Assembly: GCA_002269645.1 (NCBI GenBank)
Contig: NIVC01001680.1
Coordinates: 62,001-126,000, forward strand
Direction of reading: 5' to 3'
Origin: Macrostomum lignano
Taxonomy: Eukaryota
Length of the DNA stretch: 64,000 nucleotides
The first letter of the stretch is position 1. Every line of letters starts with the position of its first letter. Below the pieces are notes generated by a model. That model was not told the DNA's origin. It did not search any database and saw nothing but the letters and a program-made list of their open reading frames with translations. Below are positions 5,393 through 29,579 of the stretch, piece by piece. The translations under genes were made by a program, and so were the position numbers.

Positions 5393-6544
5393 TCAGCCAT
5401 TCCTGGCAACTTGAGCCACAAAGTCGTTTCTGACCCACAGTCCGTCCCACTCGTTGAATGTAGCGATGTTCTGCACTTGGAAGCTCATGGACAGCAGAGA
5501 GAAGTTCCTCGAGGTCATGAAGTGCGTCACAAACTCGTAATGCTTAGACAATTGCGGTCCGTTACTGAGTTTTTTCCGCCAAAACTCCATCTGCAGCGCC
5601 ATGATGTTGAGCTCTCTAAACAGCTTCTCGCCAGTCTTCATGAACAGGTGCTCACCGGACTCGATGTCCATCTTGACGACCACATTCTTGGTGCCGATGT
5701 GCGCTCGAAGCTCGTCCGCTTTGACAGTGGTCACGGGAATCGTGTCCTCGATTAACTTCGTAACCTGCCGTTTCCAGTCAGCCAATCCGCCCGAGCCGCC
5801 TCCAACATTGCAATTCATGCCGTCAGCGTCCCAGCTGATCCGCTTGACCGCCACCTCGTCACTGATGAAGCCCCAGAAGAGCTTCAGCTTGTCGTCAAGC
5901 AACTTCAGCTGCTTCGCTGACATCTGCAGTCTGACCAGTGTGCGAATGTTTGCATCGATGGCCACCACGGGATACCCGAGCTCTCTGGCCTGCAGGCTGT
6001 AGATGCCAAGGTTGCTGCCGATATCGAGGAACGTCGCAGAGTTTTTCGGAAGCTTCTGTAACAGGTTGAGCATCGTCCGAATAGAGCCAATTTCCCATTC
6101 TCCGTTTTTTAGCAATTTCCCGGAAATCATGTCCTCCTTGCCGAAGGTGAATATCGGCATTCGGCCGCCGCCCATCGCTCGGGTCACATTGGCCACAGGA
6201 GACCCTTGTCTGACAATGGTGTACAACTGCTGCGGTAAGTTCCTGTTCAGCTCGCACAGGGGAAACTTGCCCCTGACTAACTGGTAGGCCGGCGTCTCCT
6301 GACACAGCCGGTGCTGCAGGCTGGGGTTCGTGAAGTCGACGTTTCGGAGCTCATTGAATGGAGGACAGTTTTTGATCATCTCGACATCGCTCAGTGTTGG
6401 TAGCGACTCTGCGGCGGCCAGGCCTTTGTTTCGAATGAGATGTACTTTTGAAGTGGCCAAAATTTTGGGCCACATTAGAAACGCCACCGCAAATAAAAAA
6501 ACTACAGCGCAGGCCAGCAGTACCAAATTATGCTTTGTTCTCAT
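5393..6544 (-). CDS. FkbM-family (Methyltransf_21) SAM-dependent methyltransferase with N-terminal membrane anchor, copy 1 (383 aa, intronless)
   Basis: Intact ORF. SAM-binding motif I FLDIGSNLG, acidic AIDAN, and the FkbM-type VVKMDIESGE motif. Short basic N-tail followed by hydrophobic LVLLACAVVFLFAVAFLMW. Confidence 0.88.
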   Translation of the reverse strand: MRTKHNLVLLACAVVFLFAVAFLMWPKILATSKVHLIRNKGLAAAESLPTLSDVEMIKNCPPFNELRNVDFTNPSLQHRLCQETPAYQLVRGKFPLCELNRNLPQQLYTIVRQGSPVANVTRAMGGGRMPIFTFGKEDMISGKLLKNGEWEIGSIRTMLNLLQKLPKNSATFLDIGSNLGIYSLQARELGYPVVAIDANIRTLVRLQMSAKQLKLLDDKLKLFWGFISDEVAVKRISWDADGMNCNVGGGSGGLADWKRQVTKLIEDTIPVTTVKADELRAHIGTKNVVVKMDIESGEHLFMKTGEKLFRELNIMALQMEFWRKKLSNGPQLSKHYEFVTHFMTSRNFSLLSMSFQVQNIATFNEWDGLWVRNDFVAQVARNG

Positions 6545-6641
6545 TGAATTGACTAGTGTGCAGCAGAGCAGAGTTAATTGCGTTTAGTTCTAGTTTAACT
6601 TCTTGAGATTTAGTGATTGGGACTCAGTGCTGGCAGTCCAG

Positions 6642-6649
6642 CTTATATG
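6642..6649 (-). promoter_or_regulatory. TATA-like CATATAAG about 100 nt upstream of FkbM copy 1
   Basis: GGATCTCAGTGCATATAAG. The same motif lies at a similar distance upstream of copy 2 (23326-23332) and copy 3 (28350-28357), although the surrounding sequence has diverged. Confidence 0.45.
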
Positions 6650-6889
6650 CACTGAGATCCTCAAATGAAAGCAGCCCCACCAAGATCGCCTGGCCAACTA
6701 GAATTGGTCCTCATTCAGAAGGCGGGTGCGCGAAAGAGTATGCACTATCGTACAGTTTAAAGTTTCTTCACTTGGGACTGGATGAAACAGAGTTCCAGGC
6801 CACCAGACTGTACGGATACAGAATATAGATTAGAGCTATGATTGGCACACGGTGTGCCATTCACACGCTTGCCGAGTGTTCCAACCCTC

Positions 6890-7270
6890 AGAATCATTAC
6901 CAGCTGAATCATTCCCGTGAGAATCATTCTCCTTCTGTATCATTCCTCCTGAGCACCATTCTCCCTCAGGATCATTCCCCTTCAAAATAGTTTGCCCCTC
7001 AGCGTCATCATCCTCAGACTTTTGTCCCTAGAATCGTTCCTCTTTAGGCTAATTTCTTATGAAATCATTCCCACATGTCTCCATTCCTCCTGAGCAACAT
7101 CTTCTGACTCTTAGCATCATTCCCTTCAGAATCAATCCCTCAGAATCGCCCCCCCCCTCAGCATCATTCCTCTCAACAGTATTCCCCAATGAGCACCATT
7201 CCCCCTCAGCATCATTCCTCTCAGCAGTATTACCCAATGAGCACCATTCCTCCTTAGCATCATTCCCCCT
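6890..7270. repeat. Degenerate tandem repeat (CATTCCTC/CCCCTCAG-rich)
   Basis: Recurring cattcctcctgagcaccattccccctcagcatc-like units. Confidence 0.6.
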
Positions 7271-7320
7271 CAGAAGTAATACGTTATTGAAATCACCAAA
7301 AGAACGAAGTGAACCTTCGT

Positions 7321-7436
7321 GGGAGGAGCAGCAGTTTCTGGTTGCTCAAACACGAGTGGGAGGAGCAGCAGTTTCTGGTTGCTCAAACACGAGTGGGAGG
7401 AGCAGCAGTTTCTGGTTGCTCAAACACGAGGGGAGG
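7321..7436. repeat. 37-bp tandem repeat, 3 copies
   Basis: gggaggagcagcagtttctggttgctcaaacacgagt repeated at 7321, 7358 and 7395. Confidence 0.9.
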
Positions 7437-8079: not shown

Positions 8080-11056
8080 TGTGCCCGCTGGGCACTTATT
8101 CTTGCCTTTTAATGCCATAGACTACATTTAAGCCCGCTTGCAGGAGTCAAACTTACTTTAATTCAAATTAGCGGGCAGTTAATGACATTTAACGCCCGAT
8201 GGTCTATTTCAAACTTACTTTAATTCAAATTAGCGGGCAGTTAATGACATTTAACGCCCGATGGTCTATTTCAAACTTACTTTAATTCAAATTAGCGGGC
8301 AGTTAATGTCATTTAACGCCCGATGGTCTATTTCAAACTTACTTTAATTCAAATTAGCGGGCAGTTAATGACATTTAACGCCCGATGGTCTATTTCAAAC
8401 TTACTTTAATTCAAATTAGCGGGCAGTTAATGTCATTTAACGCCCGATGGTCTATTTCAAACTTACTTTAATTCAAATTAGCGGGCAGTCAATGACATTT
8501 AACGCCCGATGGTCTATTTCAAACTTACTTTAATTCAAATTAGCGGGCAGTTAATGACATTTAACGCCCGATGGTCTATTTCAAACTTACTTTAATTCAA
8601 ATTAGCGGGCAGTTAATGACATTTAACGCCCGATGGTCTATTTCAAACTTACTTTAATTCAAATTAGCGGGCAGTTAATGACATTTAACGCCCGATGGTC
8701 TATTTCAAACTTACTTTAATGCAAATTAGCGGGCAGTTAATGACATTTAACGCCCGATGGTCTATTTCAAACTTACTTTAATTCAAATTAGCGGGCAGTT
8801 AATGACATTTAACGCCCGATGGTCTATTTCAAACTTACTTTAATGCAAATTAGCGGGCAGTTAATGACATTTAACGCCCGATGGTCTATTTCAAACTTAC
8901 TTTAATGCAAATTAGCGGGCAGTTAATGACATTTAACGCCCGATGGTCTATTTCAAACTTACTTTAATGCAAATTAGCGGGCAGTTAATGACATTTAACG
9001 CCCGATGGTCTATTTCAAACTTACTTTAATTCAAATTAGCGGGCAGTTAATGACATTTAACGCCCGATGGTCTATTTCAAACTTACTTTAATGCAAATTA
9101 GCGGGCAGTTAATGACATTTAACGCCCGATGGTCTATTTCAAACTTACTTTAATGCAAATTAGCGGGCAGTTAATGACATTTAACGCCCGATGGTCTATT
9201 TCAAACTTACTTTAATGCAAATTAGCGGGCAGTTAATGACATTTAACGCCCGATGGTCTATTTCAAACTTACTTTAATGCAAATTAGCGGGCAGTTAATG
9301 ACATTTAACGCCCGATGGTCTATTTCAAACTTACTTTAATTCAAATTAGCGGGCAGTTAATGACATTTAACGCCCGATGGTCTATTTCAAACTTACTTTA
9401 ATTCAAATTAGCGGGCAGTTAATGACATTTAACGCCCGATGGTCTATTTCAAACTTACTTTAATGCAAATTAGCGGGCAGTTAATGACATTTAACGCCCG
9501 ATGGTCTATTTCAAACTTACTTTAATGCAAATTAGCGGGCAGTTAATGACATTTAACGCCCGATGGTCTATTTCAAACTTACTTTAATGCAAATTAGCGG
9601 GCAGTTAATGACATTTAACGCCCGATGGTCTATTTCAAACTTACTTTAATGCAAATTAGCGGGCAGTTAATGACATTTAACGCCCGATGGTCTATTTCAA
9701 ACTTACTTTAATTCAAATTAGCGGGCAGTTAATGACATTTAACGCCCGATGGTCTATTTCAAACTTACTTTAATGCAAATTAGCGGGCAGTTAATGACAT
9801 TTAACGCCCGATGGTCTATTTCAAACTTACTTTAATGCAAATTAGCGGGCAGTTAATGACATTTAACGCCCGATGGTCTATTTCAAACTTACTTTAATTC
9901 AAATTAGCGGGCAGTTAATGACATTTAACGCCCGATGGTCTATTTCAAACTTACTTTAATTCAAATTAGCGGGCAGTTAATGACATTTAACGCCCGATGG
10001 TCTATTTCAAACTTACTTTAATGCAAATTAGCGGGCAGTTAATGACATTTAACGCCCGATGGTCTATTTCAAACTTACTTTAATGCAAATTAGCGGGCAG
10101 TTAATGACATTTAACGCCCGATGGTCTATTTCAAACTTACTTTAATGCAAATTAGCGGGCAGTTAATGACATTTAACGCCCGATGGTCTATTTCAAACTT
10201 ACTTTAATGCAAATTAGCGGGCAGTTAATGACATTTAACGCCCGATGGTCTATTTCAAACTTACTTTAATGCAAATTAGCGGGCAGTTAATGACATTTAA
10301 CGCCCGATGGTCTATTTCAAACTTACTTTAATGCAAATTAGCGGGCAGTTAATGACATTTAACGCCCGATGGTCTATTTCAAACTTACTTTAATGCAAAT
10401 TAGCGGGCAGTTAATGACATTTAACGCCCGATGGTCTATTTCAAACTTACTTTAATGCAAATTAGCGGGCAGTTAATGACATTTAACGCCCGATGGTCTA
10501 TTTCAAACTTACTTTAATGCAAATTAGCGGGCAGTTAATGACATTTAACGCCCGATGGTCTATTTCAAACTTACTTTAATTCAAATTAGCGGGCAGTTAA
10601 TGACATTTAACGCCCGATGGTCTATTTCAAACTTACTTTAATTCAAATTAGCGGGCAGTTAATGACATTTAACGCCCGATGGTCTATTTCAAACTTACTT
10701 TAATGCAAATTAGCGGGCAGTTAATGACATTTAACGCCCGATGGTCTATTTCAAACTTACTTTAATGCAAATTAGCGGGCAGTTAATGACATTTAACGCC
10801 CGATGGTCTATTTCAAACTTACTTTAATGCAAATTAGCGGGCAGTTAATGACATTTAACGCCCGATGGTCTATTTCAAACTTACTTTAATGCAAATTAGC
10901 GGGCAGTTAATGACATTTAACGCCCGATGGTCTATTTCAAACTTACTTTAATTCAAATTAGCGGGCAGTTAATGTCATTAACTGCCCGCTAATTTTTGTT
11001 CCACTTTGTTAAGGACACAAATGTCTATGGCACAATAATAGTAATACCCATGCTTT
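8080..11056. mobile_element. Putative non-autonomous element carrying the 62-bp array (MITE or Helentron/HINE-like)
   Basis: Subterminal inverted repeats tgccatagactacattt (8113-8129) and aaatgtctatggca (11019-11032). Short hairpin gtgccc-gct-gggcac at 8081-8095. It appears to interrupt a partial copy of the 3370-5390 module (7985-8075 and 11060-11240). No TSD established. Confidence 0.4.
8149..10995. repeat. 62-bp tandem array (~46 units), each unit with an internal inverted repeat; ends in a perfect hairpin
   Basis: Unit caaacttactttaat(t/g)caaattagcgggcagttaatgacatttaacgcccgatggtctattt, with no spacers. Terminal 20-bp perfect inverted arms at 10955-10974 and 10976-10995. Confidence 0.97.
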
Positions 11057-14330: not shown

Positions 14331-15859
14331 AGAGTTTTCCAATACATGTTCGATGTTTTAGATCGACATTTGTCTAATATTCTGCGCAGCAAACCCAGCC
14401 AACGAGATCAATGCTTGCCTCAAATCTTAATTTTACATGAATTTACTCCATTTTATGTTCGTCTTCATCCTAACTATTAAAAGTTTTTGTTTGAGTATGA
14501 CTTCAAATTTTAGAATCCGTGCAAAAATAATTCCAGGGATTGGAATTCCGGGGTTCAAAATCCGCAGGTTTTAACAGCTAACAAGTGCTTTTATAAAAAC
14601 TGTTTCTAAAATTAAAACTGTAAAAAAGAAAATAGGTTTTTCAAACAACTTTTTTTGGAAAATCCAAAGTGAAAAAACTGTAAGTGGGGGGCCACAGGGG
14701 GCCGTGGCCTAACGGGGGGCTCAGGCCCCCCTGCCCCCCCTCTTGGACGCGCCACTGCTCTGATGAGAATTGCCTGCAACACCAGCAAATTCGCTACACC
14801 GAGATTGCATGCAGCTTGTTCCTGGGGAAGAAAGTTGCCAGACATTGCCTCCCAGCACTGCCTGACCGGATTGTCGAGATCATGTCGTATCTCTTGTTTT
14901 TCTTGTATTTCATTTAAGGGGCACTATACCATGTAGATAGTTGCTGACTGTTGCACTCTATCAGCTGTTTCCAGATGTTTCAACAACAGACGGATCAACT
15001 TGTCCGGAAATTTCCCAATGACGTTCGCACCTGCACCTGCACTCGTTGCTATCGAAGTGCTCGTGATAACCCTTCTCTTTTCTCAGTCGCTTTACAAGTA
15101 AAAAATGCTCTGAGCGAACAAACGTATCAAGCCTTAATTCTGTTGTCAGTCAGTGTGAGGCCTGTTCTCTCTAGATTTTTTTCGTCCCATGCGTTTTAAT
15201 TTTAATGAAAAAGTTCTCCAAATGAGTTCTTTTAAATGCTGGAGGCAAACGTTTTAAGGCGGTTGAAAGTGTGATCAATTTCACATTTTAACACCTTGGT
15301 TACTACAGCGGGCAGTGAAGTTCGTCTATAAACTGTTGTGTACCGCTGTATGCTGTGTTCCTATCAACTCTTGATACGCGTAGTTCTAACACCTGTTCAA
15401 TTCTTTGTTTCGCTCATTTTTACTTTTTGATAATTAATGATTTTGATTCACGAACCCAGCCTGTGCCTGTTTGCCTCTTCTCAGTTTGCAAAAATTTATA
15501 AAACATTTTGTTTCCTCATTTGCTTTCTCATCTTTTATCTTCACAGATTAGCGCTGAAAATTATCCTGAAAACTTTCTCTTTGTAACTTTCTAGCAATCT
15601 GCGCTTGCTTCCGTTGGGGAGGCAACAAAAAAGAAATGAAAATAGTTGAATATAGTTTAAATAAACTACATTTATTGTAACTTAGTAAACTCAACATAGG
15701 TAATTTCTTAGATAAATGATTTATTAATCAGAAAAGCATCAGCCTTAAAAACCAGAGACTTAGCCTGAGATATCGGATCCTCTATGAGCTTTGGCTCAAA
15801 GCATCCGAGCAACCCCTCCCTCATGAGCCAAGCATTTAAGCAGTTTTCCCCATGAGCCT

Positions 15860-16235
15860 TGGAGCGTTGACATCTCAGAAATTCCCCCCGTCAGCTCTGA
15901 CATCTCAGAAATTCCCCCCGTCAGCCTTGACATCTCAGCGATTCCCCCCGTCAGCTCTGACATCTCAGAAATTCCCCCGTCAGCTCTGACATCTCAGAAA
16001 TCCCCCCGTCAGCTCTGACATCTCAGAAATTCCCCCCGTCAGCCTTGACATCTCAACAAGGCCCTCGTCAGCCTTGACATCTCAGAAATTCCCCCCGTCA
16101 GCTCTGACATCTCAAAAATCCCCCCGTCAGCCTTGACATCTCAACAATGCCCCCGTCAGCTCTGACATCTCAGAAATTCCCCCCGTCAGCCTTGACATCT
16201 CAACAATGCCCCCGTCAGCCTTGACATCTCACCAA
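15860..16235. repeat. ~29-30-bp minisatellite (gacatctcagaaattccccccgtcagctct)
   Basis: About a dozen units. It is an expanded version of the degenerate repeats at 4020-4140. Confidence 0.85.
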
Positions 16236-16490
16236 TTCTTCCCGTGTCCTGGTTTGCCTAATGAAAGCGCAGGTCCCGCTGGCTAAATCCGATACAAAGG
16301 GCTCGTTTTATACACTTTATGCAGCTTCCCTCAAATTGGTTTAAATTCAACTCCTATCTCTGTACGCTCGTAGTTGTAAATTTCAGCGCTTGAGTTGGGA
16401 CTAGAAGGACAGGCAAGCTTCATTGTTTGGGCTCTCTGTCGACAGTGACACTGCATGGCTACAGAAAGCGCAGAGACAGATGGTCTCAGT

Positions 16491-18064: not shown

Positions 18065-18145
18065 TCTCAGTGCTGCCCTGCCTGTAACTTTCTGCCAAGC
18101 CTGCAGGCAGCAGGCGAGAATGAGGAGATGAGGGTTGAAGGTTGA

Positions 18146-18726
18146 GGGGATGAGGGGTGAGGGGATGAAGGGTGAGGGGATGAAGGGTGAGGGGATGAGG
18201 GGTGAGGGGATAAGGGGTGAGGGGATGAAGGGTGAGGGGATGAAGGGTGAGGGGATGAAGGGTGAGGGGATGAAGGGTGAGGGGATGACGGGTGAGGGGA
18301 TGAGGGGTGAGGGGATGAAGGATGAGGGGATGACGGGTGAGGGGATGAAGGGTGAGGGGATGAAGGGTGAGGGGATAAGGGGTGAGGGGATGAAGGGTGA
18401 GGGGATAAGGGGTGAGGGGATGACGGGTGAGGGGATGAAGGGTGAGGGGATAAGGGGTGAGGGGATGAGGGGTGAGGGGATGAAGGGTGAGGGGATGAAG
18501 GGTGAGGGGATGACGGGTGAGGGGATGAAGGGTGAGGGGATGAAGGGTGAGGGGATAAGGGGTGAGGGGATGAAGGGTGAGGGGATAAGGGGTGAGGGGA
18601 TGACGGGTGAGGGGATGAAGGGTGAGGGGATAAGGGGTGAGGGGATGAGGGGTGAGGGGATGAAGGGTGAGGGGATGAAGGGTGAGGGGATGACGGGTGA
18701 GGGGATGAGGGGTGAGGGGATGAGGG
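18146..18726. repeat. 15-bp G-rich tandem array (GAGGGGATGAAGGGT)n, ~39 units
   Basis: Direct reading. Each unit has one G4 run and one G3 run. Confidence 0.95.
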
Positions 18727-20269
18727 GTCTGGAGCCCGTTGTATTGAGGAAGCCATGGTAACGCTGGGAAGAGCAATACCACTGCATCTATTGTTATGCT
18801 GAGAGATGTAGAGTCCCAATGGCCTGTGCACAGCAGCTGCAGCAGACTGTATGCTGCCAAGCCTCACCTTTCCGCTCCCTTTCTGAGCTGTGCACAATGA
18901 TCTCATGCATAATGAACGATAATCAGAGAATCTGCCCCAACAGCAGAGCTCATTGCGGGGTGAGGTTGGAGGTTCGCTTCCTATATCTGAGTCTGAAAAG
19001 TATTTGGCAAATAGATAGCATTACTACTATGTAGCGATTGTGTAACAGTTATCACGCAGGTATTCGAGTAGGCCAAGGACTACTTAAAACAGTCGAATAT
19101 AAGAGATATTAAATTTATTCGTCCTTGATGTCTGATTCATGTAGGCATCAGGCGTGTATGAATTTTAGACATTTTTTCTTTAATGGTGCACATAACGTTT
19201 GCAGGCAGGATTCTTTATAAACAGACTATACTGCCATTTGTTCATGCCGTTTTCCCAGCGTCCAAGGAACTCTGGAGATGCTGGAACAGGAGATGCTGGA
19301 ACAGGAGATGCTGGAGCATTTGTCTGCTGATTGAGTCTCAGGTCTTGCCAAGCGTTCCAAAGCTACTAACTCTACTTAGAGTAGGTAAACGAACTCTCTA
19401 CTTCTCAACTCGTTCTCACATTTACCTAATTCTCTAAACGGGGAATCAAAAATATGCATTTGTTGTATTTGCAGTGCCTTGTAATTAAGCATCAGAAATG
19501 CTTGCCTAAACGATAGTAGCAGTTAATTCACTTTAAACCACAGATACTATATAACTAGATAGGTCACTCAGTTAATTTACTCTCACACTACTCTTAGGAC
19601 CAGCCATCAGTAGCGAAAAATAGCCAAAATAGGAAATCAATTTTAGAAAAATAACTCAGCTCAGGTCTGCGGGCCGAAGAGAGAGGAAAGGAGAAGGAAT
19701 AGAAGAGAGGAGAGAGAGGAGATGAGAAAAGATATGAGATTGAGAGATTATCTATGAGATAGATAGAGGCTTCCTGGGTCGGAGTTTACCAACACAGCTG
19801 ATTTGCACACAGCAGATGCGCGAGTTTCAGAACGGCTTCTCTTAGATGTGGCATGACTTCTGTTTGCAGCAAGATCATCTCTGTTTTCTTTTAAAACTGA
19901 GTAAAAAAAACTCATGATTCGCAAAGCATGAGCTGTTCTCCGAAAACGCAACTAATGCTCCTAACTGAAGACCCCATCGTTTGCCTCATCTTCTGAAGAA
20001 TGTGAGGAACCAAGCGAGCTGCTCTGTCAGAGTTTGACTCATGCCAGCTCTGACAGCTCAGCGATCGTCTGCATGCATGTTGTTGACTGACTGAGACTCT
20101 CGGTAAAAGTGCGAATGTTCTTCAAGCGGCCTTTTGCAACAGCTCGGCTATCCAGCTGAAATTCGACTTGAGTGTTCGACAGAGTATACGACCGAGTTCT
20201 CCAGTTCTCTGTGAATCTTGGTAAGTTTATTCAATATTCAATGTCAGTTGTGTCAGCAAATGTGTCAGT

Positions 20270-21470
20270 TAAATGAGAAAACCCTGGCGGACGCCTACGC
20301 CAGACGGCAGCAAGCCGCTGTTGACGATGCCATTCGAAGCGGCATATCGTCGCGGTCCCAAAAAGCCAGGCACGACACGGAAAGAGGAGAACGGGGGGAT
20401 TTCGCTCATGTCCTGCGCCGCGAAGCTGTTCAGCCGGCGTGCTGCTAGCTCGGTTTCAGCCTGTGCTGGACCAGTTTCTGCGCCCTGAGCCCACATCGCG
20501 GTACAGTGACGCAGATCCTAGCCCTCCGCCGCATCATCGAGGAGGCGCGCATCCACCAGTCAAGTCTCGTGGTGATCTTCATTGACTTCCTCAAGGCTTT
20601 CGACTCGTTGGATCGCGGCGCGCTGTCTCTCGTGCTTCGCGCATACAATGTACCGGAGCAACTGATTTCCGCCATCATGGCGATGTACCAGGATACGACC
20701 GCTTCGGTGATGACGCCAGATGGACTGTCGGACCAATTTAGCACGTCGTCAGGCGTGCTGCAATGTGACACTCTGGCGCCTTTACTGTTTGTTCTGGCAC
20801 TGGATTGGGTGCTGAGGACCGGCCTGTCCAACACGGATGACGGCTTCCTGTTGAGAAGACGCACGAGTCGGCGACACCAGGAAAAGCGGCTCTCCGTTCT
20901 CGGCTATGCGGACGACCTCGCGCTGCTTTCATCGTCGGCTGAAGGCGCTCAGCGGCTGCTAGATGGCCTGACGGCAGCAGCATCGCGATTCGGCCGCATG
21001 CTGAAAGCGCGGAAGACGGTAGTCTTCACGGTTCCCTCCGACCTGCCTGCCGAGATCTACTACCGAGACGCTGCCGGGGAGGCAATCATGCTTACCCGTT
21101 GCCAGCGGTTCCTGTACCTCGTTGGCCTCGTGCCGGACGTTGCCGACGGCCTATTGTGACGACGAGGACCGGCCTGGGCCGCGTCTCATTCTGTGCGCTC
21201 CGTGCTCTATTCTGAGGCCTTGGATGACGGGCTCAAGGCTCGGCTGTTTCAGGCAGACGTTGAGACTGTCTTGTTGTACAACGCCGAGACCTGGACCCTG
21301 ACGGACGCTTTGGAGAGGCAGCTGGACGCTGCGCATGCGGCCATGCTGTGTGCGGCGTTCGGAGTGCGCAGCGGTCCAGGCAGCGAGACCAGTGCCGCGC
21401 TCTGCACAAGGGCACGCCTGATGCGGCCTTTTGACCTGCTGCGCGGTCGGCAACTTCGACTTTGCGGCGA
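20270..21470 (+). mobile_element. 5'-truncated, degenerate non-LTR retrotransposon (RTE-like) reverse transcriptase
   Basis: GISLMSCAAKLF, QILALRRIIE, FIDFLKAFDSLDR, GVLQCDTLAPLLFVL, YADDLALL, and thumb region VETVLLYNAETWTL. Contains frameshifts and stops. Confidence 0.9.
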
Positions 21471-22223
21471 CAAGCCGGGTGATTGCGCAAAAATTGGCCT
21501 TTCTGCTCGACCATGAGATGCTAGTCAAGGCCAAGGGTCTACGAAAATTTGACCGCGTCCTGTTTCACCTCCGAAATTATTTGACCGCCCCAATTTCGCC
21601 GTGGCAATTTCACTTTTTTCAGAAGGTTTTGACGAAATCGCAGCATTTTCTAGCTCGCATTTGTTGATTTTCAATCAATATCGCTGATACAATGAATAAA
21701 GTCACAGCCTTGATAATTCATATCCACATAATTGTATTCATACACTGTACATTTCACATCCAATCACATCAAAGCGGATATATATTAATATGGAATCATT
21801 TTTCACACCTAAACTCAGTGACAACTTTGAGTCGGGAAAGTTTTTTCGGATAAAAAACTTGTAGAAAGTCTATATAGTATACTTAAAAATAAAATAGTAG
21901 TCTTAAATACGAGCCGTATTACAAATCTTAAATGGAAGCACTGTGATGCTCGATTATCATTTATTTATTCCCTTTTCGTTTACTCATACCAGAAGACCTT
22001 CTGGTAGAACGGAAGATCTTCTTCGAAACCTTTCCGTTGAGTATAGTATAGTCAGTATGAATTTTAAACTACCTGGAAATGCCACTTCCTCAAAAAGTCG
22101 CAAGCATCATAGGAATATTTAGCATATGCACAGTTTTAAAGAATGACCACCCTCGCCGCAGAAAATAGGGTGATCAAACTGTTGGTGCCGAATAGCGCGG
22201 CAAAACTGCAGCGGCGAAATTGC

Positions 22224-22610
22224 GGTGGTCAAATTGTGGCTGTTAAATTTTAGTGGTCAAATTGTGGTGGTCAAATTGTGGTGGTCAAATTGTGGTGGTC
22301 AAATTGGGGTGGTCAAACTGTGGCGGCGAAATTTGGGTGGTCAAACTGTGGTGGTCAAATTGTGGTGGTCAAATTGTGGTGGTCAAATTGTGGCGGTCAA
22401 ACTGTGGTGGTCAAATTGTGGTGGTCAAATTGTGGTGGTCAAATTGTGGCGGTCAAATTGTGGCGGTCAAGTTCTGGTGGTCGAATTGTGGTGGGCAAAT
22501 TGTGGCGGTCAAGTTCTGGTGGTCGAATTATGGTGGGCAAATTGTGGCGGTCAAATTGTGGTGGTCAAATTGTGGTGGTCAAATTGTGGCGGTCAAATTG
22601 TGGTGGTAGT
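22224..22610. repeat. 14-bp minisatellite (GGTGGTCAAATTGT)n
   Basis: Direct reading. Confidence 0.9.
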
Positions 22611-23424: not shown

Positions 23425-25584
23425 ATGATAACAAAGCAGTATTTAATACTGCTGGCCTGCGCTACAGTTCTTTTAATTACTGTGGCGTCTATAATGTGGC
23501 CCAACAAGTTGACCGCTTCAAAGTCGGCATCAGAGTTTCTGCCAACTCTGAGCGATGCCGACATGATCAAAAACTGTCCTCCATTCAATGAGCTCCGCAA
23601 CTTCGACTTCACGAACCACAGCCTGCGGCACCGGCTGTGTCAGGAGACGCTGGCCTACCAGTTAGTCAGGGGCAAGTTTCCCCTGTGCGAGCTGAACAGG
23701 AACTTACCGCAGCAGCTGTACACCATTGTCAGACAAGGGTCTCTTGTGGTCAGTGTGACCCGAGCGATGGGCGGCGGCCGAATGCCGATATTCACCTTCG
23801 GCAAGGAGGACATGATTTCCGCGCATATGCTAAAAAACGGCGCGTGGGAAATTGACTTTATTCGGAAGATGATCAACCTGTTACAGAAGCTTCCGAAAAA
23901 CTCTGCGACGTTCCTCGATATCGGCAGCAACCTTGGCATCTACAGCCTGCAGGCCAGAGAGCTCGGGTATCCCGTGGTGGCCATCGATGCAAACATTCGC
24001 ACACTGGTCAGGCTGCAGATGTCAGCGAAGCAGCTGAACTTGCTTGACGACAAGCTGAGGCTCTTCTGGGGCTTCATCAGTGACGACGTGGCGGTCAAGC
24101 GAATCAGCTGGGACGCTGACGGCATGAATTGCAATGTTGGAGGCGGCTCGGGCGGATTGTCTGACTGGAAACGGCAGGTTACGAAGTCAATCGAGGACAC
24201 GATTCCCGTGACCACTGTCAAAGCGGACGAGCTTCGAGCGCACATCGGCACCAAGAATGTGGTCGTCAAGATGGACATCGAGTCCGGTGAGCACCTGTTC
24301 ATGAAGACTGGTGAGAAGCTGTTTAGAGAGCTCAACTGAAGAGTTTATCGGGTGGTGATCAGTCACTCGAAAACTCCCACTTCCAGACCTCAGGCCTGGG
24401 AACAGAATTCAGTAATAACTTACTGATGCGGGCTCCTCTTCTTTGTCGGGCAGGTGTTCGGAGCTCGTTTCTTCGAATCTTCTTCCTCTGGAGTAGTCTG
24501 CTTGAATTCTAAAAATCGGCCGAATAAGAGAGCTTAATAACTTAGTCTGTCGACGTCAATGTATTCCTCGAGTGCAGAAACCAATATATTCCTTGAGTTC
24601 AGAAATCAATATATTCCTCGAGTGCAGAAATCAGAGATGCACCCTAATAACAAAGTCAACTCTAAAACAATGACGAGGGCCTCCAGAAAGGGCATCTTCT
24701 TTTAGAAATAACGGAATCGGAGTGGTGTGCTCCTTTTGGTTACTCTAGGGTACCAAAATCAATCAATCAGTAATCGACTAAGAGTATCGGAATCGGTCCG
24801 CAGATCCTATCCAATCCTTTAGGAATATGGAGGCCTCAAATTCAATAACTCAGTAGAATTCGACTGATCAGTAACGGCCGGCAATGACACAGCTCTCAAT
24901 AATTCAATAAAGAAGATTCAAATAACAAAGACTCTAACAAAGGCTTACCAATTGGTGTTTGTCTCTCTCAGAGATATAGTTTTACTTGGTAGCTCTGGCT
25001 AAGCGCAAGATTTCTTAAGGCTGCTCCGAGTCTGAGGTTTCAGCTCGGATTTTTCGCTTCTATTTATACACGATTTCATTCGAACTTGAGCTTCAAAGCG
25101 GTTTTATTGATAAGAATCAAAAGATGGACTTTGTCTCTTGAACGGTGGGGTTTTACATAGAAAAGGTGAAGCTTGGGTCGCATTTAAATTGAGATTTACC
25201 ATGTAGGTTTAAAACCAGTTTTTTCGGACCATGTGATTGTCACTCGTTGTTTACATGATATTGCAGGTATAACTAAAAATAGAGTATGACGCATGCTAAT
25301 TTTTAAATGGTATTCATGTTTTTATCTTACTACTTTTAGTAATCTGCTAAGCTTGGAGATCTCTACACAACATCATGGCGCTGCAGATGGAGTTCTGGCG
25401 GAAGCTCGGTCAGCGACCGCAATTGTCCAAACATTACGAGTTTGTGACGCACTTCATGACCTCGAGGAACTTCTCTCTGCTGTCCATGGGTAGCTTCCAA
25501 GTGCAGAACATCGCTACATTCAACGAGTGGGACGGACTGTGGGTCAGAAACGACTTTGTGGCTCAGGTTGCTAGGAAAGGCTGA
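23425..25584 (+). pseudogene. FkbM-family methyltransferase copy 2, interrupted by a solo LTR (coding parts 23425-24336 and 25372-25584)
   Basis: Near-identical to copies 1 and 3. The reading frame stops at a TGA formed by the first three bases of the insertion and resumes as ATC ATG GCG CTG CAG… after it. Confidence 0.85.
24337..25367. mobile_element. Solo LTR (1031 bp), probably Ty3/Gypsy-type
   Basis: TG…CA termini with short inverted ends (TGAAGAG / CTCTACA). 4-bp TSD CAAC at 24333-24336 and 25368-25371; copies 1 and 3 have a single CAAC. TATAAATA on the minus strand near 25061-25068. No ORF. Confidence 0.8.
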
Positions 25585-26950
25585 TGCAATTTTGAGTGCT
25601 TGGAGCTCGCTGGATCTCACTTTCTCACGTTATAAACAAGTCAAATGGGCACCTTTTAAAGGCGAGAATCGGGTTTTGAGCCAGTAGAATTCTCATACAA
25701 AATGATCTGCACTGTAAGTTTCATTGTACTTTTAACAAAATTTTAATCGACTAATTATTTAGAACAAATCGCTTCATGTGATGGATTAGACCATGCATCT
25801 CGGATTGAGACTTGCCTGTAAAAGCATAATTTAATGTGGCTATGAGTCCATGTCGATACACAAAGCTTGAACTTTGTCAGTTTACAGGCCGATTCCTGGG
25901 TTCGTACGTGTCGGATCTGATGCAGCCTCTATTGCTCCAATTCTTGTTCTTCATGCTAGGCGCCCAGTGATATGTAGGCAGCTGCAAGTTTCCCGCTTGG
26001 ACAGCTGTTTCCAGACGTTTAACAGACGGATCAACTCATCCGGGCATTCTTCCAACTCCATTTTCCAAACTGCGTCCTCACTTTCAACTGCAGTTCAGTT
26101 ACTCGTATTGTATTTTCATTTCGTGTCCTCCCATGCTGTTATAGTTTAAATTTAAAGTATATCTCAAAGGAGTACTTTTAATTGCTGGAGGGAAAGCTTT
26201 TAACGTGGATGAAAGCGTGGTCAAAGTTTCAATCGCCTATCGCTTTTCGTTCTAGCTACAGCGTGCAGTAAGTTTGTGTCTTAACTATTTGTACACCTGC
26301 TTTGTTGTTTTTTAATCTGCTCAAGCAAATTTTTGGGTGATCACTTTACTTCTTTTGCTTTCGTCAAATAATGCGTGCTCGTGACCAGCCTGTTTTCCTC
26401 TTATCGGTGAGTGCAGTATGCGAATAAATATAAGATTTATCTCTGCATATATTTGCGTTTCTGTCATCGTTTCTGCGCAGCTTTTTTATGAAGCCATTCT
26501 AACTGTAAACTCCTCCGCCTGTTGATCGTCTCAACAGCTTGGCTTGACTTTGTTTTTGCCTCCAGAGATTGTTAATGAGGTCACTCTGGTTAAATTAAGT
26601 GACAATTCGGCTCGTAGCCCGAATGCAGAACATGCAGCTTGTGCCAAGCCTTCAGGCACAGGCGAGTATGCGGAATAAAAAGGCTGTGGAATGAGGGATG
26701 TTAGATGAAGGGATTTGATATGAGGGGTGTGGGATGAGGGAATGTGAGGTGACGGGTTGAGGGATGAGGGGATGTGAGATGAGGAAATGTGGGATGAAGG
26801 GATGTGGGATGAGGGTTTGTGGGATGAGGGGATGTGAGATGAGAGGATGTGCGATGAGTGGATGTGAGATGAGGGTGTGGGATGAAGGGGTGTGATATAA
26901 GAGGATGTGAGTATAAGGGGATGAGTGGATGAGGGTTGTGCTTGTTTTAC
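25585..26950 (+). repeat. Duplicated module, copy C (3' flank of FkbM copy 2), internally deleted
   Basis: Shares the 3' flank with copy 1 (gagctcgctggat…cacgttataa…aatgggcac). 25980-26600 matches 14960-15600, and 26630-26700 matches 18090-18130. Confidence 0.7.
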
Positions 26951-28454
26951 GCGAAGAAGCCACTTAAGACTTGTTCATCCGCCATCAAACGAGCTATCAA
27001 ATCACACTACTAACGTACTAAACGATGGAAAGTAAAGTTCATGGGCTCCTCCACAGCAGAAGGCCTCTGACTAGTCAAAAGGCAGTAGGCGGCATTCGCT
27101 GCCCTTCGCCCCCCCACCCCGAATGCGGGTTCCTCTGCCTCGGATCGGCCTATTGTCCTGGAGCAGCCAGCCAGCTGCCTGGGCAGGCGGGTCCGTTCCA
27201 CTTCCCAGTCGGCCCTGCTCCAAGGGGTTGGGCCCAGCTGGGACTTCCTGTCCTCTTTGGGTGAGCTGGTGCGCCTGGGCGTCCCAGCGACCCCTTACCT
27301 TAAGTCGGCTGATTTTGGCAGTGCGGACCGCTTCAGCTGCACGACTCGGCGACCCGGGCAGATTTGGGCGCAGGACTCCGGCCTCCGTTCCGGCAGGTTC
27401 CGCATCCCGCACGCCCTGCTCTTTGCCCGTGGGAGCATCGGACTCCTAGGATCCGCAGCTTTGAAAGGCCCGACTTTGTGCGGGTAAAAAATGAGGCTGT
27501 TGTGCGGGTTACGCCGCATCCAGGCGTCGGACAGCCCCAGGATGGCTGTGAAGAAGGTTCCGTCGGCGAGCTTTCGGGTGTCGTACATCGTTAGGCTCGA
27601 GGCAGAGCTCTCGGTTGACTGCAAGCAGTCCGTTCGGGAGCTCTTTATGCGGAGGTGACGACGCTCCTGGCCAGAACCCAAATTCTATGCCTCTTGGTCC
27701 GGGGCGCTCATCTTCCCTGCAAAAAGCTAGACTGAGGTCTCAGCTCTGCTCGGGCAGCAGCTAAAGGAGCCGCCGTCCCGAGTAAGCACCACTGGGCCAA
27801 ATAAGAAGCCACGAGACCCTCGTCGCATTCAAGGGAATTTTTAGGCCTTTCAGAGAGTTCTCCAAGTGGTGGAACGCAGCGTTTATTTTTTTTCTGCAAG
27901 TTCCTCATTTATATAAGAGTACTAGGTTTGGCCACTACATGTATTTATAACAAATGTACTCATCATTTTCATATTCCTAATGTTTTGAGAATTAAACAAA
28001 ATTCGGAAAAAATTTAGCAATCGATTTTCTTAGAAACCCAACCCTCACCAATGTATGTTTTTCAAAAAGCTTGTTAGCATTGGTCTAAATCAAAACCAAA
28101 TGCGAAACGCGAATATGAATCGATCATAGTCTGATGACCATTCGACATTCTGCAGCCGACAGTCTGGAATTGCTCCAGTGTAAAAGGTATTACGCTCGTA
28201 ATACACTGTACGCTCGTGCATAATCTTTCACGCACCATCAAGTCTGCTGAAAAAATTCTCTCCAAGCCTTCCGAAGTCTACGAACTGCGTCATTTTTACC
28301 AAGCTAGGCAATCCGGGTGTGGTGCTTTATGGATCAGAGGATCTCTGCGCATATAAGCTGGGCAGGTCCGCACTGATACCAGCGCAAAAGGGAGCAAGAA
28401 TTTAAACTGTGACTCAGTGCAAGAACTTCTGTTTGCTTTATACTAGTCAATGCA

Positions 28455-29579
28455 ATGATAGCAAAGCAGTATTTAATACTTCTGGCCTGCGCTACAGTTC
28501 TTTTCATTGCGGTGGCGTCTCTATTGCGGTCCAGCAGTTTGACCACCTTAAAGACAGCTACAGAGTTGCTGCCAACACTGAGCGATGCCGAAGTGATCAA
28601 GAACTGTCCTCCGTACAACGAGCTCCGCAATGTCGACTTCACGAACCCCAGCTTGCGGCACCGGCTGTGTCAGGAGACGCTGGCCTACCAGTTAGTCAGG
28701 GGCAAGTTTCCCCTGTGCGAGCTGAACAGGAACTTACCGCAGCAGCTGTACACCATTGTCAGACAAGGGTCTCTTGTGGCCAATGTGACCCGAGCGATGG
28801 GCGGCCCTTTAATGCCGATATTCACCTTCGGCAAGGAGGACATGATTTCCGGGAAATTGTTAAAGAACGGCGCCTGGGAAATTGGCTCTATTCGGACGAT
28901 GATCAACCTGTTACAGAAGCTTTCGAAAAACTCTGCGACGTTCCTCGATATCGGCAGCAACCTTGGCATCTACAGCCTGCAGGCCAGAGAGCTCGGGTAT
29001 CCCGTGGTGGCCATCGATGCAAACATTCGCACACTGGTCAGGCTGCAGATGTCAGCGAAGCAGCTGAACTTGCTTGACGACAAGCTGAGGCTCTTCTGGG
29101 GCTTCATCAGTGACGACGTGGCGGTCAAGCGGATCAGCTGGGACGCTGACGGCATGAATTGCAATGTTGGAGGCGGCTCAGGCGGATTGGCTGACTGGAA
29201 ACGGCAGGTCAAGAAGTCAATCGAGGATACGATTCCCGTGACCACTGTCAAAGCGGACGAGCTTCGAGCGCACATCGGCACCAAGAATGTGGTCGTCAAG
29301 ATGGACATCGAGTCCGGTGAGCACCTGTTCATAAAGACTGGCGAGAAGCTGTTTAGAGAGCTCAACATCATGGCGCTGCAGATGGAGTTCTGGCGGAAAA
29401 AACTCAGTAACGGACCGCAATTGTCTAAGTATTACGAGTTTGTGACGCACTTCATGACCTCGAGGAACTTTTCTCTGCTGTCCATGAGCTTCCAAGTGCA
29501 GAACATCGCTACATTCAACGAGTGGGACGGACTGTGGGTCAGAAACGACTTTGTGGCTCAAGTTGCAAAGAAAGTTTGA
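28455..29579 (+). CDS. FkbM-family methyltransferase with N-terminal membrane anchor, copy 3 (374 aa, intronless)
   Basis: Intact ORF with FLDIGSNLG and VVKMDIESGE motifs and N-terminal YLILLACATVLFIAVASLL. Confidence 0.88.
   Translation: MIAKQYLILLACATVLFIAVASLLRSSSLTTLKTATELLPTLSDAEVIKNCPPYNELRNVDFTNPSLRHRLCQETLAYQLVRGKFPLCELNRNLPQQLYTIVRQGSLVANVTRAMGGPLMPIFTFGKEDMISGKLLKNGAWEIGSIRTMINLLQKLSKNSATFLDIGSNLGIYSLQARELGYPVVAIDANIRTLVRLQMSAKQLNLLDDKLRLFWGFISDDVAVKRISWDADGMNCNVGGGSGGLADWKRQVKKSIEDTIPVTTVKADELRAHIGTKNVVVKMDIESGEHLFIKTGEKLFRELNIMALQMEFWRKKLSNGPQLSKYYEFVTHFMTSRNFSLLSMSFQVQNIATFNEWDGLWVRNDFVAQVAKKV

What the first reader, a model, noticed from the sequence alone, without database searches (positions are those of the whole stretch)
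5393..29579. Cluster of membrane-anchored FkbM methyltransferases: candidate secretory-pathway glycan O-methyltransferases
Seen: three paralogues with FkbM motifs. Each is preceded by a short basic tail, one hydrophobic helix and a variable stem, and has four conserved Cys and N-glycosylation sequons (NVT in copies 1 and 3; NFS in all three). That is the type II topology of Golgi glycan-modifying enzymes. Established: FkbM-family enzymes O-methylate small molecules and sugars in bacteria (as I recall, rhizobial NoeI is one). O-methylated glycans occur in planarians, molluscs and nematodes, and the enzymes responsible are largely unidentified. Inference: this is an expanding family of lumenal sugar or metabolite O-methyltransferases. 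It is the best candidate for an undescribed system in this window.
Basis: partly seen in the sequence, partly recalled or inferred. Interest (0 to 1): 0.8.

Follow-up and report, generated by a model that had tools for sequence, protein, structure and literature searches.

The report
Membrane-anchored FkbM methyltransferase gene cluster
A flatworm (Macrostomum-type) genome segment carries two intact copies and one transposon-broken copy of an intronless gene for a membrane-anchored FkbM-family methyltransferase; its relatives are in flatworms and bivalves, which makes it a reasonable but unproven candidate for the unidentified enzymes that O-methylate animal glycans.

Summary
Three paralogues lie at 5393-6544 (-), 23425-25584 (+) and 28455-29579 (+). 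Their conserved cores are about 96% identical in DNA. That insertion puts a stop codon after residue 304, and copy 2 also carries derived changes at conserved sites, so it is probably a pseudogene.

FkbM membership is now tested:
- TIGR01444 scores above its curated cut-off.
- Every family-invariant residue is kept.
- A confident AlphaFold model (pLDDT 84) has FkbM-family methyltransferases as its best structural neighbours.

A lumen-facing type II topology is supported mainly at family level. Among 104 animal homologues the N-terminal flank is more positive (+2.4 against +0.7), the hydrophobic segment has a median of 20 residues, and N-glycosylation sequons are enriched. The window copies alone are ambiguous: their flank charges do not favour N-in, and their two sequons are no more than chance.

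The glycan substrate is untested. Support is circumstantial: every named relative is from Macrostomum or a bivalve, and animal glycan methyltransferases are still unidentified. The main rival is the Drosophila Star group, also type II FkbM-domain proteins, where Star is a cargo chaperone.

The family is already annotated as "FkbM domain-containing". I rate it a new member of a known kind, of moderate interest.

The parts
5393..6544 (-). Copy 1 (c1): intact intronless CDS of 383 aa plus stop. Signal-anchor at residues 7-26 (nt 6467-6526); FkbM methyltransferase domain at residues ~129-379 (nt 5408-6160).
   Evidence: ORF list; alignment; TIGR01444 37.8 bits against cut-off 37.7; hydropathy.
6643..6662 (-). 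Conserved upstream block GAGGATCTCAGTGCATATAA, containing a TATA-like element, ~100 nt upstream of the c1 start codon.
   Evidence: Shared with c3, and in degenerate form with c2. That it acts as a promoter is inferred.
23425..24336 (+). Copy 2 (c2), 5' part: codons 1-304 (anchor, stem and most of the methyltransferase domain). It is followed directly by the TGA at the start of the insertion.
   Evidence: Derived non-synonymous changes at otherwise conserved sites, including N118S, which destroys the NVT sequon.
24337..25371 (+). 1,035-bp insertion that breaks c2. It starts TGAAGAG and the element proper ends CTCTACA (imperfect inverted termini, TG...CA). It is flanked by a 4-bp direct duplication CAAC (24333-24336 and 25368-25371), so it looks like a solo LTR. 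It is not an intron: there are no GT/AG boundaries and the stop is immediate.
   Evidence: Sequence; 4-nt overlap of the blastn break points; termini. No second copy was found in the window or in loci L001-L005, so the classification is inferred.
25372..25584 (+). Copy 2, 3' part: the last 70 codons plus stop. It is still in frame, holds the invariant ME motif and the NFS sequon, and is now detached from the 5' part.
   Evidence: Translation and alignment; tblastn 90% identity to c3.
28337..28356 (+). Conserved upstream block GAGGATCTCTGCGCATATAA (TATA-like), ~100 nt upstream of the c3 start codon.
28455..29579 (+). Copy 3 (c3): intact intronless CDS of 374 aa plus stop. Anchor at residues 6-24 (nt 28470-28526); variable stem at ~25-48; Cys-containing conserved module at 49-115 (nt 28599-28799); FkbM domain at 120-370 (nt 28812-29564); motif I FLDIGSNLG (nt 28941-28967); KMDIESGE (nt 29298-29321).
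   Evidence: AlphaFold model with pLDDT 84 and pTM 0.85.

Best explanation
c1 and c3 encode catalytically competent, SAM-dependent methyltransferases of the FkbM family. Each is tethered to secretory-pathway membranes by an uncleaved N-terminal signal-anchor.

Proposed layout: a 5-6-residue cytosolic tail; one ~20-residue helix; a fast-evolving stem of ~25 residues; a conserved Cys-containing module of ~65 residues; and a Rossmann-fold catalytic domain that faces the ER/Golgi lumen.

Proposed mechanism: SAM imported into the lumen binds at motif I (D165-x-G167-x-N169-x-G171) and at the acidic residue ending strand 2 (D188). The invariant K282-x-D284-I-E286-x-x-E289 and E311 line the acceptor and catalytic site. 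A methyl group is transferred to a hydroxyl of an acceptor, most probably a sugar of an N-/O-glycan or glycolipid.

c2 is a recently inactivated copy. The cluster arose by local DNA-level duplication, one copy inverted. Each copy carried its own promoter-like region.

What is shown: the fold, family membership, conserved residues, purifying selection, the anchor, and the disruption of c2.
What is inferred: orientation, localisation, catalysis and the acceptor.

My graded confidence:
- FkbM-family fold: ~0.97
- Catalytically active: ~0.8
- Lumen-facing: ~0.7
- Glycan acceptor, and therefore the whole statement: ~0.4
For: Family and fold:
- TIGR01444 is above its cut-off for c1 and c3.
- A profile search finds 1,991 relatives, and 17 of 19 sampled relatives hit PF05050. 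Nearly all word-search hits carry PF05050.
- The AlphaFold model has pLDDT 84. Its best PDB neighbours are class I methyltransferases. Its best BFVD neighbours are annotated FkbM methyltransferases, with target TM-scores of 0.75-0.82 for several.

Catalytic competence:
- D165, G167, G171, K282, D284 and E311 are invariant, and N169, D188 (always D or E), E286 and E289 nearly so, in 127 animal-type sequences. The same pattern holds in a set of 85 that includes bacterial FkbM proteins. The window proteins keep all of them.
- dN/dS is 0.30 in the catalytic part for c1 versus c3.

Topology:
- There is a single N-terminal hydrophobic segment of 19-20 residues.
- In 104 full-length animal homologues the N-flank charge is +2.43 and the C-flank +0.72. 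The N flank is the more positive in 76, equal in 15 and less positive in 13.
- Sequons number 356 against 297 +/- 15 in shuffles. The bacterial-type set shows none of this (100 against 107 +/- 10).
- A Cys at c3 position 88 is conserved in 86 of 123 homologues. Its likely partner column holds Cys in 81 of 127, although that column (position 123) is Phe in the window proteins.

Acceptor:
- All named relatives come from Macrostomum or bivalves. Both phyla are documented to carry O-methylated glycans: planarians (PMC5936828) and molluscs (PMC8699351).
- The animal enzymes are still unknown (PMC7614267, PMC6422873).
- Three relatives also hit PF05575, the Vibrio RfbT family. From memory, RfbT methylates an O-antigen sugar.
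- From memory, characterised FkbM-family members are O-methyltransferases: FkbM on FK506 and NoeI on Nod-factor fucose.
Against: - The window proteins' own flank charges are neutral or point the wrong way (c1 +2 at the N flank against +4 at the C flank; c3 +1 against +1).
- Their two sequons are no more than chance.
- The number of post-anchor Cys across the family is odd more often than even (63 odd against 41 even), so disulfides are not demonstrated. I could not read Cys-Cys distances from the model.
- No glycosyltransferase or sugar-related gene lies beside these genes in the window or at the two homologous loci where neighbouring genes were called (L006, L007).
- No glycomic data on Macrostomum turned up.
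- The best-studied animal protein of this architecture, Drosophila Star, is known as a cargo chaperone.
- The phyletic argument rests on about 25 named proteins out of about 150 listed hits. Most hits are unnamed.
Confidence: 0.4

Rival explanations
1. The enzyme is active and lumenal or secreted, but the acceptor is not a glycan. It might methylate a small secreted metabolite, a lipid head group or a secretory protein. If the anchor is in fact cleaved, it might be released as a soluble enzyme.
For: All the fold, motif and topology evidence for the main explanation applies equally. From memory, the founding family member FkbM acts on a macrolide rather than a sugar. Nothing in the sequence specifies the acceptor.
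Against: The hydrophobic segment is 19-20 residues long, which is long for a cleavable signal peptide. Relatives with a known taxon come only from phyla with methylated glycans.
Confidence: 0.2
2. The hydrophobic segment is a reverse signal-anchor, with the N terminus in the lumen and the catalytic domain in the cytosol, as in microsomal P450s. The enzyme would then methylate a cytosolic or membrane-face substrate.
For: In c1 the flank after the helix is more positive than the one before it (+4 against +2), and in c3 the two are equal. The tail is very short. The two sequons are at chance level.
Against: Across 104 homologues the N flank is clearly the more positive one (76 against 13). Sequons are enriched only in the animal clade. 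Cysteines are conserved outside the helix.
Confidence: 0.12
3. The protein works like Drosophila Star. Its lumenal FkbM-like domain would bind and escort particular secretory cargo out of the ER, without catalysing methyl transfer.
For: PANTHER PTHR34009 'Protein Star' is defined on Methyltransf_21 proteins and is expanded in an annelid (PMC12403961). Star is a type II membrane protein that traffics Spitz (PMC2950126). The overall architecture is the same: N-terminal anchor plus a lumenal FkbM domain.
Against: Every residue that is invariant from bacterial FkbM enzymes to the animal clade is kept, and the catalytic domain is under purifying selection. A pure binding protein need not show either. 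The cytosolic tail is 5-6 residues, whereas I recall that Star's is long. None of the named relatives is labelled Star-like. I could not fetch the Star sequence, so the actual distance is unknown.
Confidence: 0.1
4. The whole cluster is decaying: c1 and c3 are unexpressed or non-functional recent duplicates, like c2.
For: c2 is broken. The nearest M. lignano gene (P0002, locus L005) has an in-frame stop upstream of the KNCPP motif, so it lacks the anchor. No expression data were available. The region is packed with satellites and retroelement debris.
Against: c1 and c3 have full open frames and all invariant residues. Their catalytic dN/dS is 0.30. They share conserved TATA-like upstream blocks.
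Confidence: 0.05

Closest known systems
Macrostomum lignano hypothetical proteins BOX15_Mlig033454g1 (P0002), BOX15_Mlig013827g5 (P0001) and paralogues (P0003, P0005, P0010, P0044, P0168), labelled in UniRef as 'Methyltransferase FkbM domain-containing protein'
   Same: Same gene family and same architecture. They are intronless like the window copies. One gene (P0001) sits at four loci, two of them inverted on one contig. Identity to c3 is 84-86% in protein and 90-91% in DNA for P0002, and 72% in protein and ~86% in DNA for P0001.
   Different: None is identical, and the exact c3 protein is not on record. The window is therefore either a close relative of M. lignano or an unannotated paralogous locus. 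None of these proteins has an assigned function.
Bacterial FkbM-family methyltransferases (TIGR01444 / PF05050): FkbM of FK506 biosynthesis, NoeI of rhizobia, and the related Vibrio cholerae RfbT family (PF05575)
   Same: Same fold and the same invariant residues (motif I D-x-G-x-[NH]-x-G, acidic residue after strand 2, K-x-D-[IV]-E-G-x-E, E311). From memory, the characterised members are O-methyltransferases, and two of them act on sugars of glycoconjugates.
   Different: The bacterial proteins lack the N-terminal anchor (5 of 86 have a hydrophobic N terminus, against 97 of 119 animal ones). They also lack the Cys-containing pre-domain. The window proteins carry an extra, poorly predicted loop (residues ~240-258) that is a gap in most bacterial sequences (72 of 85 at positions 237 and 239). 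Identity is only ~20-25%.
Drosophila Star and PANTHER PTHR34009 'Protein Star' (Pfam Methyltransf_21)
   Same: An animal type II membrane protein with a lumenal FkbM-type domain. The family is expanded in some spiralians (16 copies in Alvinella; PMC12403961).
   Different: Star's established role is ER export of EGFR ligands (PMC2950126), and no methyl transfer has been described for it. As I recall, its cytoplasmic N-terminal region is long, whereas here it is 5-6 residues. Direct sequence comparison was not possible with these tools.
Uncharacterised bivalve proteins (Dreissena LOC127853728, Mercenaria LOC123552024, Saccostrea LOC134281566, and Mytilus, Sinanodonta, Crassostrea, Pinctada, Mya and Potamilus entries)
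   Same: N-terminal anchor plus FkbM domain, 23-30% identity, the same invariant residues, tandem arrays (consecutive Sinanodonta locus tags) and an intronless gene in Saccostrea.
   Different: They lack the Macrostomum-type module C-x20-C-x15-C (KNCPP...LC...FPLC). Instead they have a different conserved Cys pair (consensus CV...PIC) and a recurrent N-[VI]-T sequon before strand 4 (31 of 126) that the window proteins lack.
Plant Golgi type II polysaccharide O-methyltransferases with a Golgi SAM transporter; also C. elegans SAMT-1
   Same: A functional analogy only: a lumenal SAM-dependent methyltransferase on a single N-terminal anchor, supplied by a Golgi SAM transporter (bioRxiv 10.1101/2021.07.06.451061, listed; SAMT-1 in PMC7614267).
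   Different: From memory, the plant enzymes belong to other methyltransferase families, not FkbM. No transporter gene was found in this window.

Membership tests
FkbM-family methyltransferases (TIGR01444 / Pfam PF05050) | Scores above the curated cut-off of the NCBIfam family model TIGR01444 | tested here: met
   c3 scores 40.4 bits and c1 37.8 bits against a cut-off of 37.7, covering model positions 1-133 of 143. c1 passes only narrowly.
FkbM-family methyltransferases (TIGR01444 / Pfam PF05050) | Scores above the gathering threshold of Pfam PF05050 Methyltransf_21 | tested here: not met
   c3 scores 17.9 bits against 22.7. c1 and c2 have no hit at E<=0.01. However, 17 of 19 close and distant relatives do hit PF05050, the best at 3e-17. 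Profile searches link the window proteins to PF05050 proteins at E of 1e-24 to 1e-36.
FkbM-family methyltransferases (TIGR01444 / Pfam PF05050) | Class I Rossmann methyltransferase fold, closest to other FkbM proteins | tested here: met
   The model has pLDDT 84 and pTM 0.85. PDB neighbours are all class I SAM methyltransferases. The top BFVD neighbours are annotated FkbM family, best E = 7.5e-11, with target TM-scores of 0.75-0.82 for several.
FkbM-family methyltransferases (TIGR01444 / Pfam PF05050) | Invariant residues: motif I D-x-G-x-[NH]-x-G, D/E after strand 2, K-x-D-[IV]-E-x-x-E, and E311 | tested here: met
   All are present in c1 and c3, and in c2 if its two halves are joined.
FkbM-family methyltransferases (TIGR01444 / Pfam PF05050) | SAM-dependent methyl transfer | not testable with these tools
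   This needs a biochemical assay.
Golgi type II glycan-modifying enzymes | Single N-terminal uncleaved signal-anchor, short cytosolic tail and variable stem | tested here: met
   There is one hydrophobic segment of 19-20 residues starting at residue 6-7 and no other. dN/dS is ~1 over the first 55 codons. Whether it is cleaved was judged from its length only; no SignalP or DeepTMHMM was available.
Golgi type II glycan-modifying enzymes | N-in / C-out orientation (positive-inside rule; lumenal marks such as used sequons and disulfides) | tested here: inconclusive
   The window copies give c1 +2 against +4 and c3 +1 against +1, with sequons at chance. At family level the N flank is +2.43 against +0.72 (76:15:13), and sequons are enriched at 356 against 297 +/- 15.
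Golgi type II glycan-modifying enzymes | Golgi residence and action on glycan acceptors | not testable with these tools
   This needs localisation, enzyme assays and glycomics.
Drosophila Star group (PANTHER PTHR34009) | Type II membrane protein with a lumenal Methyltransf_21-type domain | tested here: met
   Architecture as above. The family definition is taken from PMC12403961 and Star's topology from PMC2950126.
Drosophila Star group (PANTHER PTHR34009) | Direct sequence similarity to Star, and a score against the PANTHER model | not tested
   Neither the Star sequence nor PANTHER models can be reached with these tools. None of the ~25 named relatives is called Star-like.
Drosophila Star group (PANTHER PTHR34009) | Long cytoplasmic N-terminal region, and binding and ER export of EGF-type ligands | tested here: not met
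   The cytosolic tail here is 5-6 residues. The long Star tail is from my memory, not from a tool. Cargo binding cannot be tested here.

The most novel reading that the evidence does not exclude
The anchored FkbM clade shared by Macrostomum and bivalves comprises the long-sought animal glycan O-methyltransferases. These would be the enzymes that make 3-O-methyl-mannose, 3-/4-O-methyl-galactose and similar caps in spiralians. Paralogue diversification would then explain the 'structurally selective' methylation reported in planarians.
Probability: 0.3. Interest if true: 0.85.

Novelty: new member of a known kind. Interest (0 to 1): 0.5.

Why it matters
O-methylated sugars cap N- and O-glycans in nematodes, molluscs and planarians. 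They block glycosidases and are targets of innate-immune and fungal defence lectins. Yet the papers I could read, from 2019 and 2023, still say that the animal methyltransferases are unidentified (PMC6422873, PMC7614267).

This gene family has the fold, the intact catalytic residues, a family-wide signature of secretory-pathway anchoring, and named relatives only in flatworms and bivalves. That gives the open question a concrete, cheaply testable candidate. Macrostomum can be studied by RNAi, and the genes are intronless and easy to express.

If instead the proteins behave like Star, that would also be informative. It would show how an enzyme scaffold was turned into a cargo receptor.

By itself, though, this window only adds three recent copies, one of them dead, to a family that is already annotated.

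Tried and rejected
- **First AlphaFold run.** A 5-sequence alignment gave an unusable model (pLDDT 44). It was replaced by an 85-sequence alignment.
- **PDB searches.** The sequence search gave only generic Rossmann matches plus a weak hit to the one FkbM entry, 2py6 (E = 1.2e-4). Foldseek against the PDB gave no specific neighbour (target TM-score <= 0.61). Neither gave any clue to the acceptor.
- **Intron reading of the 24337-25371 gap.** Rejected: there are no GT/AG boundaries, the stop is immediate and in frame, and a 4-bp duplication flanks the segment.
- **Bacterial contamination or very recent horizontal transfer.** Rejected for this locus. The genes lie among a reverse-transcriptase remnant, a dynamin exon and eukaryotic satellites. 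They share TATA-like upstream blocks. They have intronless homologues in the M. lignano and oyster assemblies.
- **Genomic 'glycocluster' context.** No glycosyltransferase or transporter lies next to the genes in the window, and none among the called genes at the M. lignano locus L006 or the Saccostrea locus L007.
- **Cys parity as a disulfide test.** Uninformative (41 even against 63 odd).
- **Literature.** Searches for FkbM or PF05050 with glycans in animals found nothing relevant except the PANTHER 'Protein Star' label. One search failed. Two key papers, Staudacher 2012 and Wohlschlager 2014, are not held.
- **Exact-match look-up of c3.** Nothing was found in public assemblies.

Full report
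**What is in the window**

The 64-kb window is eukaryotic and rich in repeats. Its GC content swings between 30% and 56%. It holds many minisatellites that create long spurious reading frames, a reverse-transcriptase remnant and a dynamin GTPase exon.

Three related reading frames lie at the coordinates given:
- c1 at 5393-6544 (-), 383 aa.
- c2 at 23425-24339 (+), 304 aa.
- c3 at 28455-29579 (+), 374 aa.

They are 87-89% identical in protein. Over the conserved core, c1 is about 96% identical in DNA to c2 and to c3, and c2 is 93% identical to c3 over a longer stretch. tblastn finds no fourth copy.

The best database matches are Macrostomum lignano proteins. P0002 is 84% identical and P0001 72%. 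At DNA level the nearest M. lignano locus is 90-91% identical. The exact c3 protein is not on record. The window therefore comes from a close relative of M. lignano or from an unannotated paralogous locus.

**Copy 2 is broken**

The c2 frame ends at a TGA directly after codon 304. The remaining 70 codons resume in frame at 25372 and run to a stop at 25582-25584.

The intervening 1,035 bp (24337-25371) begin TGAAGAG, and the element proper ends CTCTACA. The segment is flanked by a 4-bp duplication, CAAC, which shows up as a 4-nt overlap of the blastn break points. There are no GT/AG boundaries. I read this as a solo-LTR-type insertion. That classification is inferred, because no second copy of the element was found in the window or in the fetched loci.

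With two M. lignano genes as outgroups, c2 carries a run of derived amino-acid changes at sites that are otherwise conserved: V68F, P73H, A117V, N118S, G141A, G152D, S153F and T156K. N118S removes the NVT sequon. For c1 versus c2 the catalytic-domain dN/dS is 0.88, against 0.30 for c1 versus c3. c2 is most probably a pseudogene.

**Gene anatomy and duplication**

All three copies are intronless. So are the M. lignano homologues P0001 and P0168 and an oyster homologue.

Similarity between copies extends at least ~120 bp upstream, and motifs are shared out to about -280 bp. These include a conserved block GAGGATCTCnGyGCATATAA about 100 nt before the ATG of c1 and c3. For c1 and c2, similarity also extends ~250 bp downstream. 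The copies therefore arose by DNA-level duplication, one of them inverted, and each carried its own promoter-like region.

Synonymous divergence is 0.04-0.10 in the core. It is 0.20-0.27 in the first 55 codons, and the flanks are only 75-84% identical. This mosaic suggests gene conversion of the core, or a distinct history for the 5' end. That reading is an inference.

In M. lignano, P0001 sits at four loci, two of them inverted on one contig. Local duplication of this family therefore recurs.

**Is it an FkbM methyltransferase?**

Scanned directly, Pfam PF05050 is below its threshold (17.9 against 22.7 bits). NCBIfam TIGR01444 is above its cut-off for c3 (40.4 against 37.7) and, narrowly, for c1 (37.8).

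A profile of the Macrostomum clade found 1,991 relatives among 1.84 billion representatives. Of 19 sampled relatives, 17 hit PF05050. Nearly all of the 101 proteins recovered with a broader profile carry PF05050, including named bacterial FkbM-family enzymes.

The residues conserved across 127 animal-type sequences, and across a set of 85 that includes bacterial ones, are all present in the window proteins. D165, G167, G171, K282, D284 and E311 are invariant in the animal set. N/H169, D/E188, E286 and E289 are nearly so.

With 85 aligned sequences, AlphaFold gave a confident model (pLDDT 84, pTM 0.85) with the strand and helix order of a Rossmann methyltransferase. Foldseek against the PDB returned only class I SAM methyltransferases. 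Against predicted viral structures, the top hits are FkbM-family methyltransferases, with target TM-scores of 0.75-0.82 for several. Membership in the FkbM family is thus established, and the proteins look catalytically intact.

**Topology**

Each protein has exactly one hydrophobic segment of 19-20 residues, starting at residue 6-7. That is long for a cleavable signal peptide and fits a signal-anchor. AlphaFold draws one helix over residues 2-27.

c1 has +2 before the helix and +4 after it, and c3 has +1 and +1. Judged alone, the window proteins do not obey the positive-inside rule for an N-in orientation. Their two sequons also match what composition predicts (2.5-2.6 expected).

The family gives a clearer picture:
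- 97 of 119 apparently full-length animal hits have an N-terminal hydrophobic segment, against 5 of 86 in the mostly metagenomic/bacterial set.
- In 104 animal homologues the N flank averages +2.43 and the C flank +0.72. The N flank is the more positive in 76, equal in 15 and less positive in 13.
- Their post-anchor parts hold 356 sequons against 297 +/- 15 in shuffles, and no shuffle out of 200 reached 356. The bacterial-type set shows no enrichment (100 against 107 +/- 10).
- One Cys (c3 position 88) is conserved in 86 of 123 sequences, with a likely partner column at 81 of 127. That partner column (position 123) is Phe in the window proteins. The Macrostomum clade has its own conserved set: C51, C72, C88 and C236.

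I conclude that a lumen-facing catalytic domain is likely, at about 0.7, but not shown.

**What does it methylate?**

No tool here addresses the acceptor. Three points favour glycans:
1. Every relative with a species name is from M. lignano or a bivalve: Dreissena, Mercenaria, Mytilus, Saccostrea, Crassostrea, Sinanodonta, Potamilus, Pinctada and Mya. Flatworms and molluscs are both documented to carry heavily O-methylated glycans (PMC5936828; PMC8699351).
2. The planarian study argues that methylation occurs in the Golgi and that the enzymes must be specific. Reviews from 2019 and 2023 state that the C. elegans glycan methyltransferases are unknown, and they point to single-pass Golgi-type 'potential methyltransferases' as candidates (PMC6422873; PMC7614267).
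3. From memory, characterised FkbM-family enzymes are O-methyltransferases, and two (NoeI, RfbT) act on sugars. Three relatives weakly hit the RfbT family, PF05575.

Against it, no glycosylation genes lie nearby. No Macrostomum glycome was found. Most of the ~150 listed relatives have no species name.

**The Star rival**

A genome paper on the annelid Alvinella lists PANTHER PTHR34009 'PROTEIN STAR (Pfam:Methyltransf_21)' among its expanded families, next to carbohydrate sulfotransferases (PMC12403961). Drosophila Star is a type II membrane protein that carries the EGFR ligand Spitz out of the ER (PMC2950126).

So the architecture 'N-terminal anchor plus lumenal FkbM domain' already has a studied animal representative, and its known role is not catalytic. 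I could not obtain the Star sequence, so I do not know how close it is or whether it keeps the catalytic residues. Full conservation of those residues here, and purifying selection on the domain, argue for an enzyme. I give the Star-like reading about 0.1.

**Comparison and novelty**

The proteins are members of the FkbM family. They belong to an animal clade that is already annotated by domain but has no assigned function. They differ from bacterial members by the anchor, by a conserved Cys-containing module of ~65 residues (KNCPP[YF]NELRNVDF...LC...FPLC, specific to the Macrostomum clade) and by an extra loop at residues ~240-258. They differ from Star by their minimal cytosolic tail.

This is a new member of a known kind. 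The possible link to the missing glycan methyltransferases raises the interest, but no experiment yet supports it.

**Verdict**

Family, fold and probable secretory-pathway anchoring hold up. The glycan acceptor remains a plausible hypothesis at about 0.3-0.4. Interest is 0.5.

Noticed in passing
window 8147-10988: A large, very homogeneous tandem array with a 62-bp period. It has about 46 copies that are 97-99% identical, in a low-GC stretch.
   Followed up: partly
window 17867-18906, 22203-22607, 26682-26941, 37500-38300, 40549-41537, 41872-43088, 43433-45265, 46555-47435, 49312-50112, 51523-52596: Many separate minisatellite arrays. Each creates long open frames on several strands (up to 610 aa) that are not genes. 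Some are related to each other (26.7 kb against 18.2-18.7 kb, ~73-76% identical) and to repeats in M. lignano locus L004 (~80-85%).
   Followed up: partly
window 20506-21159 (+): A reverse-transcriptase fragment (Pfam RVT_1, E = 1.7e-15) lies between c1 and c2. It is a retroelement remnant without an obvious full-length element around it.
   Followed up: partly
window 38400-38975 (+): An exon encoding a dynamin-family GTPase N-terminal domain (Pfam Dynamin_N, E = 5.6e-28). The mechanical ORF fuses it to the upstream tandem repeat, which is probably intronic or flanking. The rest of the gene was not traced.
   Followed up: no
window 3384-5049 versus 14869-18998: Sequence just beyond the 3' end of c1 recurs in inverted orientation 10-14 kb away at 74-82% identity. 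The matches are 4011-5049 with 15955-14869, 3384-3721 with 18998-18675, and 3682-3786 with 18168-18067. This hints at an older and larger inverted duplication. No methyltransferase remnant was found at the second site.
   Followed up: no
L005 9704-10869 (M. lignano NIVC01003288.1): The nearest M. lignano homologue (P0002, 261 aa as annotated) extends upstream in frame only as far as the KNCPP motif, where a stop codon precedes it. It therefore lacks the anchor and stem, and is either a truncated pseudogene or a mis-modelled gene.
   Followed up: partly
L001-L004, L006 (M. lignano) and L007 (Saccostrea cucullata): Homologues in both a flatworm and an oyster are single-exon genes. Several relatives in the protein library have 2-5 FkbM domains in one chain (P0006 with 1,456 aa, P0007, P0011); these are either tandem-domain proteins or fused models of tandem genes. 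Family-wide lack of introns raises the question of an old retroposition or horizontal origin. I did not examine that.
   Followed up: no
window c1, c2 and c3: first 55 codons versus the rest: Synonymous divergence in the catalytic core (0.04-0.10) is two- to five-fold lower than in the 5' end of the same genes (0.20-0.27) and lower than flank divergence. This suggests gene conversion between copies, including between the broken c2 and c1.
   Followed up: partly
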